From NCBI RefSeq assembly GCF_001194135.2, contig NC_068990.1, positions 71,492,961 through 71,530,976 of the forward strand: a DNA stretch of 38,016 nucleotides, written 5' to 3'. A program made the translations under genes and the position numbers. The notes beneath the pieces are model-generated. The model was not told the origin of the DNA. It did no database searches and worked only from the letters and a program-made list of their open reading frames with translations. This DNA is from Octopus bimaculoides (Eukaryota). How positions within the stretch are numbered: position 1 is the first letter of the stretch; each line of letters starts with the position of its first letter. Positions 21,701 through 24,700 of this stretch are shown one piece after another.

Positions 21701-24700
21701 ATCACGCAATGGCAGGACATAATTAGTGCAATCGTTCTTAATTTTGCTTTGGAAAAGTTTCTTACTTGATGACCGTTTCATAGTTAAAATAATGTAGCTG
21801 TGAAGAGTGGAGTAAGCTGCCAGTATATCGGGCTTCTGATGCAGGTTTGGTTCCTGGTTAAGACATTCCATTGTTATGACTTTTATTTGCAATTTCTGGG
21901 CATAATCAATATTTCGGAGAAGACATTTTTCGTAGTACATTTTTCGTAGTACATGGAAACGAAAGCTTCAAAGGTAACCCGTTAGCCATAAGGAATACGA
22001 GATATTTTCATTTCTTAATGTTCATCGTAATAATCGGGGCATTTCTATGACCAAAGCTATGATAAGTTTTACGATGCTGACGTCATCATACGCATTGAAT
22101 AATGTGTTTTGTCTATTTTTGCAGGAAAATATTTTACTTAAACAAAGAGGTCAGAGTTCCATAAAGGTTATAGACTTTGGTTCTAGTTGTTATGAATACC
22201 AGCGAGGTACGTTTCAACTTTTATCTGTTGATTCTTTTACAAACACGCACAGATACACTCAAACGTACACCCATACAGACACATACAAAAACACACAGAC
22301 ACTCATACATACACACACACACACACACAACATATATACATGTGTGTGTGTCTTTGTGTCTGTGTTTGTCCCCCGCCACCGCTTGATAACCGACGTTGGT
22401 GTATTTAGGTCCATTTAACATAGCAGTTCGGTAAGACCAATAAAACAAGTACCAGGCATAGAAAAATTAAGTCGTGGGATCGATTAACTCGACCAAAAAG
22501 TTTTGAAGGCGGTGTCCCAGCATGGCCGCAGTTTAATGACTGGAGCTACTAAAAGACAAGAGATACAAGTGTAGATATAGTAATATGTGTAGATTCAATA
22601 TATAAGTGTAGATTCAGTATATAACAAGCAGTATATGTATTCCTAGCAGCTGTGTGCTGTTGTTGGTTTACATAAGAGTATAGCAACCAATATTACTAAA
22701 ACATAAAAAAGTGGTGATATTTGGTAGTCTTAAGGTATATAACGTAGTCTACTATAAGTAGCTTACTAAAGGACGCCAGTCTAAATCTTTCGAGGTTCCT
22801 ATACATGAAAACGTGTAACATTCATCTCAGAGATTCGGAGTTAACTGCAATTTTATTTTCTGCTAATTTGGCTTATATGCGCCTTATATGCTCATGCTCC
22901 TTATATTCCCGAAAAAATATGCATGTACGTATGTGCGTGTAAATATATATACACACACACACACACACACACACACACACACACACACACATATATATAT
23001 ATATATAAGATTCAGGGATTGAGGTGTAGGAAGAAAGTTAGCTTCAAGTAATCCGTAGTAAACATAAAAAAGCAATTTTCTGGAACACTAGCAGTTTATT
23101 GAGACGGAAGGTTGTGGATTTTTTAAACTGAAAAAAGTTCTTTTCATATTTCACGGTAGATGACAAAGGTTGCCGGGTGTGCGAATAAGAATACAAGAGT
23201 TTAAGAATAGGGTAGATAAGATCCGGGCTATACATATGCTTCATATTTACCTCAGAAGTGGTAAATATCCAAGCGAGGTGTATACTACAGGCTACTCTTC
23301 AGGCTAAGGATATCTTGATTTAATGAAAGTTTACATCGTCGCTGGGAAGTACATGTTAACACATGGAAAATTCAATCAGAATGTATAGAGGGCACAGTAG
23401 GAGAGAATATAAATGTGGAGAGAAATAAGGATTAAAAGAAATATATATATGTATATATACGTAGATAAATACATACATACATATATATATATATATATAT
23501 ATATACACACACATATACAAACACACTCACACACACACACACACACACGCGCGCGCGCGCACACACACACACACACGCCCCCCCCCACAATTCATGGAGT
23601 TTACAAAAAGATTGAGCTACATTTAATTAATGTTCTTTATCTGTAGATCTTTCTTGTTCGCTTTTAGTTTTTACGTCTTTATTATACACCATTCTCACTT
23701 TGTCATAACTTACCAGCGTTAAATGGACACTTAAGTTGATTAGATATATTGAAATATACAAATTTTTCTATGAGTTCTATTTGGTATGGTACAATGTAAG
23801 GCTCATAGTAATGGGTGAGTCACCGCACAAGAGACATCAACTCCAGTGACACCACTGCGTAAAATAATTTTGATCGAAATTACATTCTTTTTTTAGCTGA
23901 AATCATAGGAGAAAACTTGTTTAATATTTAATATCGGGAATGTACAGAAAGTTTAAGTAAACACCATTCTAATTCGTTGTCTTGATTTCAGGATCTAACT
24001 ATCAGGATGGTGAGTCAGGTAAGACGTGCTAGACAAGTGACTAAGCCATTATAAGTATAACTGCATTATTTATTCATAAAGCCAAGTTAACACACAATTA
24101 ATCTGGACTAGACAGGTTATTTAGAGCTGACTTAAAATACTCAATTAGTTCTGAGCTGTGACTGTATTCTTGACAACTTTGTTCAATAAGTATATNNNNN
24201 NNNNNNNNNNNNNNNNNNNNNNNNNNNNNNNNNNNNNNNNNNNNNNNNNNNNNNNNNNNNNNNNNNNNNNNNNNNNNNNNNNNNNNNNNNNNNNNAAACT
24301 TTGCTATGTATTTATTATATTCTTCATTCTTCCTTTCCATATCTCTTTCATTCTTCCAACTTTATACTTTCCGCTTTTACGCTTGCATGTTTATTTTAAA
24401 CACACTTTTACTCAGTCTCCCACTTCTTAGAATCATCTATCTATCTATCTATCTATCTATCTATCTATCTATCTATCTATCTATCTATCTGTCTGTCTGT
24501 CTGTCTGTCTGTCTGTCTGTCTGTCTGTCTGTCTGTCTGTCTGCCTGCCTACCTGCCTGCCTATCTATCTATCTATCTATCTATCTATCTATCTATCTAT
24601 CTATCTATCTATCTATCTATCTATCTATATCTTTGTTTCTTTATGTCTGTCTTTATCTCTCTTACATTCTCTTCCATTACGGCTCTAATCTTATCTCTTT

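What the first reader, a model, noticed from the sequence alone, without database searches (positions are those of the whole stretch)
23965..24024. Candidate activation-loop microexon in DYRK4 with two tandem, frame-preserving donors
Seen: inside the 6-kb phase-1 intron that splits the activation segment ([11 protein letters not shown]|VYTYIQSR) there is a branch-point-like ttCTAAt, a pyrimidine-rich acceptor ending at 23991, and two consensus donors 9 nt apart (ATG|gtgagt at 24010, CAG|gtaaga at 24019). They define 18- and 27-nt exons, both multiples of three and stop-free. Inclusion would give YEYQR-GSNYQD-VYTY or [18 protein letters not shown]. Established: DYRKs self-activate by cis-autophosphorylation of the second Tyr of YxY, and the DFG-to-YTY spacing is conserved in the family. 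Inference: alternative splicing may yield three activation-loop lengths and add a Tyr and Ser residues, tuning autoactivation or substrate choice. I do not know of a described DYRK activation-loop microexon. No UGC motif typical of SRRM4-type neural microexons is present just upstream.
Basis: partly seen in the sequence, partly recalled or inferred. Interest (0 to 1): 0.85.

Follow-up and report, generated by a model that had tools for sequence, protein, structure and literature searches.

The report
Conserved cephalopod DYRK4 activation-loop microexon

Summary
The splice-site arrangement is rare by chance: about 0.003 equal-or-better candidates per shuffled intron, and none elsewhere in the 38-kb window.

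The 27-nt version (23992-24018, GSNYQDGES) is a genuine exon.
- The Octopus sinensis RefSeq DYRK4 protein carries exactly [18 protein letters not shown], and an older gene model of this same assembly ends in it.
- Argonauta hians (GQTSPSQES) and the cuttlefishes Acanthosepion pharaonis and Sepia esculenta (GSDSSDDNS) have a 27-nt, AG/GT-flanked exon at the same phase-1 site.
- Between the Octopus and Argonauta introns, the only significant non-repeat match is the microexon with its 3' splice-site region and donor.
- Cuttlefish RNA-seq contigs exist with and without exactly these 27 nt, including two runs of one whole-hatchling study. It is therefore an alternative cassette there, with inclusion predominant (66 versus 9 contigs).
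- 189 DYRK4 models outside cephalopods show no insert.

The 18-nt version depends on an internal GTGAGT that is absent from Argonauta and cuttlefish, and no transcript or model uses it.

The function is unknown. The interior evolves fast but stays hydrophilic. No paper describing this exon was found, although public gene models include it. It is a real, lineage-specific microexon at an otherwise invariant kinase position, of moderate interest.

The parts
22125..22206 (+). Constitutive DYRK4 exon encoding [27 protein letters not shown]. It ends in phase 1 with donor GAG|GTACGT.
   Evidence: tblastn to O. sinensis DYRK4; donor score 9.2 bits.
23967..23973 (+). Branch-point-like ttCTAAt, 19-20 nt upstream of the AG. 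Its TAAT is the start of the block conserved with Argonauta.
   Evidence: The branch-point role is inferred from the yUnAy consensus and the distance; it was not tested.
23970..23991 (+). Conserved 3' splice-site region TAATTCGTTGTCTTGATTTCAG (pyrimidine tract plus AG).
   Evidence: 21 of 22 nt are identical in Argonauta hians. Over the last 25 intron nt, 22/25 are identical, against 17/25 and 10/25 for the two neighbouring constitutive exons.
23992..24018 (+). 27-nt cassette microexon GATCTAACTATCAGGATGGTGAGTCAG, which inserts GSNYQDGES between YEYQR and VYTY.
   Evidence: The same peptide is in O. sinensis XP_036361871.1 and at the end of the older model of this assembly, P0005. Orthologous 27-nt exons occur in Argonauta (L002:19277-19303) and Acanthosepion (L003:35166-35192). 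Cuttlefish transcripts exist with and without it.
24010..24015 (+).
   Evidence: It is present in the sequence and strong (10.5 bits). There is no GT at this position in Argonauta or Acanthosepion, and no model or transcript uses it.
24019..24032 (+). Distal donor CAG|GTAAGACG plus conserved downstream bases. This is the donor used by the annotated 27-nt form.
   Evidence: GAGTCAG|GTAAGACG is identical in Argonauta, and TCAG|GTAAG is shared with Acanthosepion. Score 11.2 bits.
28240..28473 (+). Constitutive exon encoding (V)[17 protein letters not shown]...KRLFF. It holds the YxY autophosphorylation motif.
   Evidence: acceptor score 6.8 bits, donor TTG|GTGAGT 9.0 bits.

Best explanation
Window 23992-24018 is a genuine 27-nt cassette microexon of the octopus DYRK4 orthologue, a class II DYRK kinase. 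It lies in an old phase-1 intron that splits the activation segment.

When included, it inserts nine hydrophilic residues (GSNYQDGES) between [11 protein letters not shown] and VYTY. This lengthens the otherwise invariant gap between the DFG and YxY motifs from 9 to 18 residues. The exon predates the split of octopods and cuttlefish.

Its 3' splice-site region, donor, length and frame are conserved. Its interior sequence drifts but keeps a Ser/Asp/Glu/Gln-rich character with no hydrophobic or basic residues. In cuttlefish it is alternatively spliced, and inclusion is the commoner form in whole animals.

The second, proximal donor (the 18-nt form) is an Octopus-lineage feature created by the codons GAT-GGT-GAG. 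At most it is a minor or cryptic site. When two strong donors lie 9 nt apart, the one nearer the downstream 3' splice site is normally chosen, and that is the donor the annotated form uses.

Inferred, not shown: the insert forms a flexible acidic, phosphorylatable loop at the tip of the activation segment next to the autophosphorylated tyrosine. The +27 isoform remains an active kinase. The insert modulates NAPA-assisted cis-autophosphorylation and/or access to the substrate groove, giving two DYRK4 activity states from one gene.
For: Gene identity:
- The best hits are all named DYRK4.
- The match to human DYRK2 structure 3K2L has E = 1.5e-144, with a clean 9-residue gap exactly at R|V.

The exon is real:
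- O. sinensis XP_036361871.1 reads [18 protein letters not shown].
- The older model of this assembly, P0005, ends ...[14 protein letters not shown].
- Argonauta GAB1610898.1 and Acanthosepion CAE1301254.1 carry 9-residue inserts at the same spot, each encoded by a 27-nt AG/GT-flanked exon in its genome.

Transcripts and alternative use:
- Ten Sepia esculenta-type RNA contigs contain the 27 nt and three lack exactly those 27 nt.
- SRR23936181 (included) and SRR23936170 (skipped) are both whole-hatchling libraries of one S. esculenta study.
- Contig counts in the cluster are 66 included against 9 skipped, and both forms occur with each alternative N-terminus.

Constraint:
- The only significant non-repeat alignment between the 6.0-kb Octopus intron and the 4.3-kb Argonauta intron is 23970-24032 (E = 3e-6).
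- The upstream 25 nt are 88% identical while the exon interior is 48% identical; the neighbouring exons are 83-85% identical.

Lineage restriction:
- 116 + 73 DYRK4 models outside cephalopods, including up to 18 RefSeq isoforms per bivalve, have no insert.
- The region-focused search found no further insert-bearing animals.

Chance is excluded.
Against: - No transcript of O. bimaculoides itself could be reached with these tools.
- Both O. vulgaris models (CAI9729151/2) lack the exon. Skipping in Octopus could therefore be real, or could be an annotation miss, because aligners commonly miss microexons.
- The O. sinensis RefSeq model may have been guided partly by earlier protein models.
- The poorly conserved interior (13/27 nt identical to Argonauta) allows the view that the peptide is merely tolerated rather than functional.
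- G at the first position and S at the last may be conserved only because they overlap the splice-site consensus.
- Both AlphaFold runs gave poor models (mean pLDDT 57 and 66), with the activation segment below 50. There is therefore no structural support for any mechanism.
- No splicing-regulator motif is shared by the three genomes.
Confidence: 0.85

Rival explanations
1. Both tandem donors are used in Octopus, giving three functional activation-loop lengths (+0, +18, +27), and the extra Tyr and Ser residues tune autoactivation.
For: ATG|GTGAGT at 24010 is a near-consensus donor (10.5 bits). It is stronger than both flanking constitutive donors, it preserves the frame and the resulting exon is stop-free. 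No octopus transcript data were reachable to exclude its use.
Against: The internal GT is absent from Argonauta and Acanthosepion, whose exons are nonetheless 27 nt long. No model or transcript shows a 6-residue insert. The O. sinensis model and the older O. bimaculoides model both use the distal donor. The Tyr occurs only in Octopus. By the established proximity rule for competing strong 5' splice sites, stated here from general knowledge, the downstream donor should win.
Confidence: 0.12
2. In Octopus the 27-nt exon is constitutive. The O. vulgaris models without it are annotation artefacts, so in this genome there is no isoform switch but simply a longer activation loop.
For: The single O. 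sinensis RefSeq model includes it, and no alternative isoform is listed there. The older O. bimaculoides model also includes it. Both of its donors are very strong. Annotation pipelines often miss microexons.
Against: Cuttlefish show true skipping in assembled transcripts. The acceptor is weaker than its neighbours (4.3 against 6.8 and 7.8 bits), which is typical of a regulated exon. Two independent O. vulgaris isoform models both skip it.
Confidence: 0.2
3. The exon is real and conserved as a splicing unit, but its peptide is functionally neutral. It is a tolerated surface-loop insertion retained by splicing constraints, with no effect on kinase behaviour.
For: The interior is only 48% identical between Octopus and Argonauta, and no residue motif is shared. 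The only shared residues (first G, last S) overlap the splice-site consensus. A G/D polymorphism at the first residue is tolerated in cuttlefish.
Against: The length is exactly 27 nt and the frame open in three lineages that diverged deep within the coleoids. All versions share one composition: polar or acidic, with no hydrophobic or basic residue. The insertion sits at a position that does not vary in length in 189 other DYRK4 models. The flanking intron is more conserved than around the constitutive exons.
Confidence: 0.25
4. It is a chance constellation of splice-like signals in a long AT-rich intron, not an exon.
For: 190 mechanical AG...GT open candidates exist in the intron.
Against: None of the others has comparable sites, and shuffles give 0.003 per intron. 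Orthologous exons, protein models and spliced transcripts all exist.
Confidence: 0.01

Closest known systems
Alternatively spliced frame-preserving microexons (3-27 nt) in signalling proteins, as in the SRRM4/eMIC-dependent neural programme of bilaterians (Irimia et al. 2014, cited in PMC8437376; bioRxiv 10.64898/2026.09.05.749416)
   Same: The exon is 27 nt and a multiple of three. It is a cassette type with conserved flanking intron sequence. It inserts a short hydrophilic loop into a folded domain of a kinase, and it is conserved over a deep clade.
   Different: There is no UGC within 100 nt upstream in Octopus (one at -18 in cuttlefish and one at -33 in Argonauta). Tissue specificity is unknown. 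Inclusion is the predominant form in whole cuttlefish hatchlings, not a minor neural form. The interior sequence is far less conserved than is typical of vertebrate neural microexons.
Known DYRK-family splice variants: human DYRK4 N-terminal and catalytic-domain variants (Papadopoulos et al. 2011 JBC, cited in PMC7465136 and PMC5831797), DYRK1A and DYRK1B isoforms
   Same: Alternative splicing of a DYRK gene produces protein isoforms. PMC5831797 reports that DYRK4 shows splice-variant-dependent localisation.
   Different: The reviews I could read place none of these variants in the DFG-YxY stretch of the activation loop. The primary paper was not available, so I could not check its details. 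The cephalopod exon is lineage-specific, and no paper I could search mentions it.
Tandem alternative 5' splice sites a few nucleotides apart (donor 'wobble' splicing)
   Same: Two consensus GT donors lie 9 nt apart in the same frame in O. bimaculoides.
   Different: Use of the proximal site is undocumented, and the site is not conserved outside Octopus.
CMGC kinases with naturally longer activation loops, such as MAPKs, where the DFG-to-TxY gap is about 17-18 residues (general knowledge)
   Same: With the insert, the DFG-to-YxY gap becomes 18 residues, similar to that of a MAPK.
   Different: In MAPKs the loop is constitutive and is phosphorylated in trans by an upstream kinase. DYRKs autophosphorylate in cis during maturation. 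No evidence here bears on how the longer loop behaves.

Membership tests
Alternative cassette microexon | Length 3-27 nt and a multiple of three, with an open frame | tested here: met
   27 nt and stop-free in phase 1 in Octopus, Argonauta and Acanthosepion.
Alternative cassette microexon | Flanked by functional AG and GT and found spliced into mRNA | tested here: met
   AG/GT is present in three genomes. Ten cuttlefish RNA contigs carry precisely these 27 nt joined to the neighbouring exons. O. sinensis RefSeq, Argonauta and Acanthosepion models include it.
Alternative cassette microexon | Both inclusion and skipping isoforms exist in one species | tested here: met
   In Sepia esculenta, L004-L013 include it and L014-L016 skip it, with two runs of one study among them. 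For Octopus the result is inconclusive: O. sinensis includes it and the O. vulgaris models skip it.
Alternative cassette microexon | Flanking intron conserved across species | tested here: met
   It is the only significant non-repeat intron-to-intron match between Octopus and Argonauta (E = 3e-6), with 22/25 nt identical upstream. This conservation is not detectable between Octopus and cuttlefish beyond the TCAG|GTAAG junction.
SRRM4/eMIC-type neural microexon | UGC motif close upstream of the 3' splice site | tested here: not met
   There is no TGC within 100 nt upstream in O. bimaculoides. One lies at -33 in Argonauta and one at -18 in Acanthosepion.
SRRM4/eMIC-type neural microexon | Neural-enriched inclusion that depends on Srrm234 | not testable with these tools
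   No tissue-resolved read data were available. The only samples with known origin are whole hatchlings.
Tandem alternative 5' splice sites | Two in-frame GT donors a few nt apart | tested here: met
   GT at 24010 and at 24019, scoring 10.5 and 11.2 bits.
Tandem alternative 5' splice sites | Both donors used in transcripts | not testable with these tools
   No protein or transcript with a 6-residue insert appears in any search. No octopus transcript fragments are in the collection.
Tandem alternative 5' splice sites | Conservation of both donors in related species | tested here: not met
   The proximal GT is absent from Argonauta (…CACAGGAGTCAG) and Acanthosepion (…GATGACAATTCAG).
Class II DYRK kinase (DYRK4 orthologue) | Kinase domain with a DFG...YxY activation loop, N-terminal DH-box region, and closest similarity to DYRK2/3/4 | tested here: met
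   The top 120 hits are DYRK4 or DYRK2/3/4. The match to the human DYRK2 structure has E = 1.5e-144 and that to DYRK3 2.7e-139, against about 1e-87 for DYRK1A. HCDLKPEN, DFGSS and [13 protein letters not shown] are all present.

The most novel reading that the evidence does not exclude
The 9-residue acidic, Ser-rich insert is a regulatory module specific to coleoid cephalopods. It would change how a DYRK is activated, for example by making the normally one-off, co-translational tyrosine autophosphorylation conditional, or by adding a second phospho-switch or pseudosubstrate element beside the YxY motif. Tissue-regulated inclusion, possibly neural, would be conserved from octopus to cuttlefish. 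In Octopus the new internal donor would add a third, 6-residue state.
Probability: 0.12. Interest if true: 0.75.

Novelty: new member of a known kind. Interest (0 to 1): 0.5.

Why it matters
DYRKs activate themselves by a single intramolecular tyrosine phosphorylation in the activation loop. The DFG-to-YxY spacing did not vary in any of the 189 DYRK4 models outside cephalopods examined here.

Coleoid cephalopods have kept an optional 27-nt exon at precisely this site. They therefore make two forms of one kinase whose activation-loop gap is either 9 or 18 residues long. That offers a direct way to ask how loop length and neighbouring charge affect DYRK maturation and substrate access.

It also adds a clear, datable example of a clade-specific microexon to cephalopod biology. 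In these animals transcript diversification (RNA editing, splicing) is of special interest. Practically, it shows that some current octopus gene models (O. vulgaris) may lack a real exon.

Tried and rejected
- A fragment search (160 aa around the loop) for short octopus transcript products found no cephalopod fragments, so the 18-nt form could not be tested.
- Look-ups of the O. vulgaris and O. sinensis loci failed. O. vulgaris is not on record, and the O. sinensis gene range (about 165 kb) is too long for DNA to be returned. I therefore do not know whether the internal GT is shared within the genus.
- Two AlphaFold2 runs were uninformative. Full-length O. sinensis with 56 aligned sequences gave mean pLDDT 56.7. 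The cuttlefish kinase region with 118 sequences gave 66.1. In both the activation segment was below 50, so I draw no structural conclusion.
- A region-focused search for similar inserts elsewhere returned only the same three cephalopod entries (P0003, P0004, P0057). The other hits were non-animal DFGSSCFENEK-type proteins whose 'inserts' look like short introns read through by gene callers. I rejected these as homologues of the microexon.
- A scan for splicing-regulator motifs (UGC, GCAUG, YCAY, PTB-, CELF- and MBNL-type) found nothing shared by the three genomes.
- Rfam found nothing in the intron, and Pfam found nothing on the intronic ORFs.
- The literature searches found no paper on a DYRK activation-loop microexon. 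The primary DYRK4 splice-variant paper (PMC3037663) is not held.
- I considered that the G/D difference at the first insert residue in one cuttlefish transcript could be A-to-I editing. I rejected this because the genome has G and the RNA has A, the wrong direction.
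Full report
**Observation.**
- The exon 22125-22206 encodes ...[11 protein letters not shown] and ends in phase 1 (CGA G|gtacgt).
- The next coding exon starts at 28240 (ttgcag|TTTACAC), giving VYTYIQSR.
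- The intron between them, 22207-28239, is 6,033 nt. It includes 110 N of assembly gap, so its true length is unknown.
- Within it lie ttctaat (23967-23973), a pyrimidine-rich acceptor with AG at 23990-23991, and two donors: ATG|GTGAGT (GT at 24010) and CAG|GTAAGA (GT at 24019).
- The 18- and 27-nt exons translate in phase 1 to GSNYQD and GSNYQDGES, without stops.

**Chance.** I scored splice sites with a rough weight matrix typed from general knowledge.
- Of 190 mechanical AG-(3n, 51 nt or less, open)-GT candidates in the intron, only these two reach the observed scores.
- No other candidate does so on either strand of the 38-kb window.
- 300 dinucleotide shuffles give 0.003 such candidates per intron.
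- Both donors (10.5 and 11.2 bits) outscore the flanking constitutive donors (9.2 and 9.0). The acceptor (4.3 bits) is weaker than its neighbours (6.8 and 7.8).
- The region is single-copy in the 2.34-Gb genome and has no Rfam match.

**The gene.** tblastn with a DYRK2-like probe and later with O. sinensis DYRK4 lays out the exons of a class II DYRK across 3.4-35.6 kb of the window.
- A search of the large protein collection returns DYRK4 orthologues throughout. The top hits are Octopus vulgaris DYRK4.
- The best solved relative is human DYRK2 (3K2L, E = 1.5e-144).
- The window differs slightly from O. vulgaris and O. sinensis. It matches a 292-aa UniParc entry (P0005) that shares the window's gap-induced missing exon. 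That entry is therefore an older gene model of this same assembly, so the window comes from a third Octopus species.

**Decisive evidence that the 27-nt exon is real.** Among the first 120 hits, 116 show [10 protein letters not shown][RK]VYTY with no insert. Three cephalopod entries carry nine extra residues exactly between R and V:
- Argonauta hians: YEYQR-GQTSPSQES-VYTY
- Acanthosepion pharaonis: YENQR-GSDSSDDNS-VYTY
- a cluster of transcript-derived cuttlefish proteins: DSDSSDDNS and GSDSSDDNS

Other entries agree.
- P0005 ends ...[14 protein letters not shown]. It uses the acceptor at 23991 and the distal donor at 24019.
- The alignment to human DYRK2 shows a clean 9-residue gap at this point.

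**Genomic orthology.**
- The Argonauta locus (L002) and the Acanthosepion locus (L003) each contain a 27-nt AG/GT-flanked exon in the homologous phase-1 intron. In Argonauta it is gatttcag|GGCAAACCTCTCCATCACAGGAGTCAG|gtaagacg. In Acanthosepion it is atttccag|GTAGCGACTCTTCTGATGACAATTCAG|gtaagcat.
- I ran blastn of the whole Octopus intron against the whole Argonauta intron with low-complexity filtering. The only significant alignment is 23970-24032 (E = 3e-6). It covers TAATTCGTTGTCTYGATTTCAG, the exon, and GTAAGACG-GCTAG.
- The last 25 intron nt upstream are 22/25 identical, against 17/25 and 10/25 for the two neighbouring constitutive exons.
- The microexon interior is only 13/27 identical, against 83-85% for the neighbouring exons.
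- So the splicing signals, the length and the frame are constrained, and the residues are not.
- Across species the insert is always hydrophilic (G/S/T/N/Q/D/E/P/Y) and has no hydrophobic or basic residue.
- The shared first G and last S overlap the acceptor +1 and the CAG|GT donor consensus. They may be conserved for splicing reasons.

**Alternative splicing.**
- Ten RNA-seq contigs (L004-L013) encode the inclusion form, and three (L014-L016) encode an otherwise identical protein without it.
- At nucleotide level the two sets differ by exactly GTAGCGACTCTTCTGATGACAATTCAG, which is identical to the Acanthosepion genomic exon.
- Three of the runs are named in Sepia esculenta papers.
- SRR23936181 (inclusion) and SRR23936170 (skipping) are both whole-hatchling libraries of the same study.
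- In the cluster, inclusion forms were seen on 66 contigs and skipping forms on 9. Both forms occur with each alternative N-terminus.
- A near-identical Acanthosepion-type transcript (L017) also includes the exon, with a G-to-A change at its first base that turns G into D.
- For Octopus itself the evidence is indirect. The O. sinensis model and the older model of this assembly include the exon, while two O. vulgaris models skip it. That may reflect true skipping or an annotation miss.

**Lineage restriction.**
- The 116 other hits have no insert. Neither do 73 further isoform models from oysters, mussels, scallops, clams, Pomacea, limpets and Lingula.
- A search focused on the loop region found no further insert-bearing animals.
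- The 'inserts' seen in some non-animal DFGSSCFENEK proteins look like short introns read through by gene callers.
- The closest octopus paralogue has the DFG-YTY stretch in one uninterrupted 1,540-aa open frame, so it has no intron there and cannot hold such an exon.
- Squids and Nautilus could not be sampled with these tools.

**The 18-nt form.**
- The proximal donor exists and is strong. It is created by the Octopus codons GAT-GGT-GAG.
- Argonauta (…CACAGGAGTCAG) and Acanthosepion (…GATGACAATTCAG) have no GT at that position, yet they keep 27 nt.
- No protein or transcript anywhere shows a 6-residue insert, but the collection holds no octopus transcript fragments.
- From general knowledge of competing 5' splice sites, the donor nearer the downstream 3' splice site is preferred when both are strong. 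This fits the annotated 27-nt form.
- I put the chance that the 18-nt form is made at an appreciable level at about one in four. I put the chance that it is functionally meaningful at about one in ten.

**Mechanism.**
- Shown: inclusion lengthens the DFG-to-YxY gap from 9 to 18 residues, two residues before the first Tyr of YTY, with a polar or acidic, Ser-rich peptide. The longer form is the major one in cuttlefish hatchlings, so it is presumably a working kinase.
- Inferred: the insert is a flexible surface loop at the tip of the activation segment. It could alter NAPA-assisted cis-autophosphorylation (the NAPA role in class II DYRKs is described in PMC5831797), alter access to the substrate groove, or serve as a phospho-acceptor patch.
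- Two AlphaFold2 attempts gave poor models with the activation segment below pLDDT 50. They neither support nor contradict this.
- No phosphorylation consensus is shared by the three inserts.
- No known splicing-regulator motif is shared. UGC is absent upstream in Octopus, at -33 in Argonauta and at -18 in cuttlefish. GCAUG lies at +5 only in cuttlefish.

**Comparison with what is known.**
- The feature behaves like a classic conserved alternative microexon. It fails the one testable hallmark of the SRRM4-type neural class, the UGC motif in Octopus, and its tissue pattern is unknown.
- DYRK reviews mention multiple splice isoforms of unclear significance and DYRK4 variants that differ in localisation (PMC7465136, PMC5831797). 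They mention none in the activation loop.
- Searches for DYRK with microexon, octopus with microexons, and activation loop with microexon found nothing relevant. A 2026 preprint that includes O. bimaculoides splicing data does not mention DYRK.
- The exon is therefore present in public gene models but, as far as I could search, undescribed.

**Verdict.**
The 27-nt alternative activation-loop microexon is real and conserved across coleoids. The tandem-donor, three-isoform idea is unsupported. The function is untested.
- I file it as a new member of a known kind, of moderate interest (0.5).

Noticed in passing
window 26196-27326 (+), inside the same intron: Two ORFs of 150 and 180 aa have no Pfam hit. 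The 180-aa ORF has more than 150 listed copies at 76-86% identity and 55,783 first-look candidates in the genome. It is a very high-copy interspersed repeat, probably the tail of a retroelement, and is unrelated to the microexon.
   Followed up: partly
window 8226-20236 (N runs 8813-9278, 11829-12224, 15252-15954, 17431-17448): DYRK4 residues equivalent to 223-268 of the O. sinensis protein (FHHQAHVEVKILEHL...CITFELLG) have no match in the window. At least one coding exon is hidden in an assembly gap. The older gene model P0005 accordingly joins KKR directly to MNLYQL.
   Followed up: partly
window 32329-32409 (+): A second likely cassette exon of 81 nt ([27 protein letters not shown]) is present in the O. 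sinensis and Argonauta DYRK4 models but absent from both O. vulgaris models.
   Followed up: no
G000:C11:7742983-7743294 (-), locus L020: The closest DYRK paralogue (70% identical over the loop region) has DFG...YTY within a single 1,540-aa open frame. It has no intron at this site and therefore no room for a comparable microexon.
   Followed up: no
L017 (ERR12374249 transcript) versus L003:35166 (Acanthosepion genome): The first base of the cuttlefish microexon is A in this transcript and G in the genome and in the S. esculenta transcripts. This changes the first inserted residue from G to D. The direction is opposite to A-to-I editing, so it is probably a polymorphism.
   Followed up: partly
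proteins P0170, P0183, P0219, P0245, P0251, P0254, P0334, P0335, P0340, P0363: Non-animal DFGSSC[FL]E[HN][EQ]K-type DYRK/Yak1-like gene calls carry 10-33 extra residues at the very same R/K|V position. These look like short introns read through by prokaryote-style gene callers, which suggests that this intron position is ancient.
   Followed up: no
window 24400-25120 and 22240-22360, 23440-23520: The intron is rich in microsatellite-like tracts ((CA)n, (TA)n, CTAT/CTGT-type repeats). These produce spurious high-scoring matches between cephalopod introns unless low-complexity filtering is on.
   Followed up: yes
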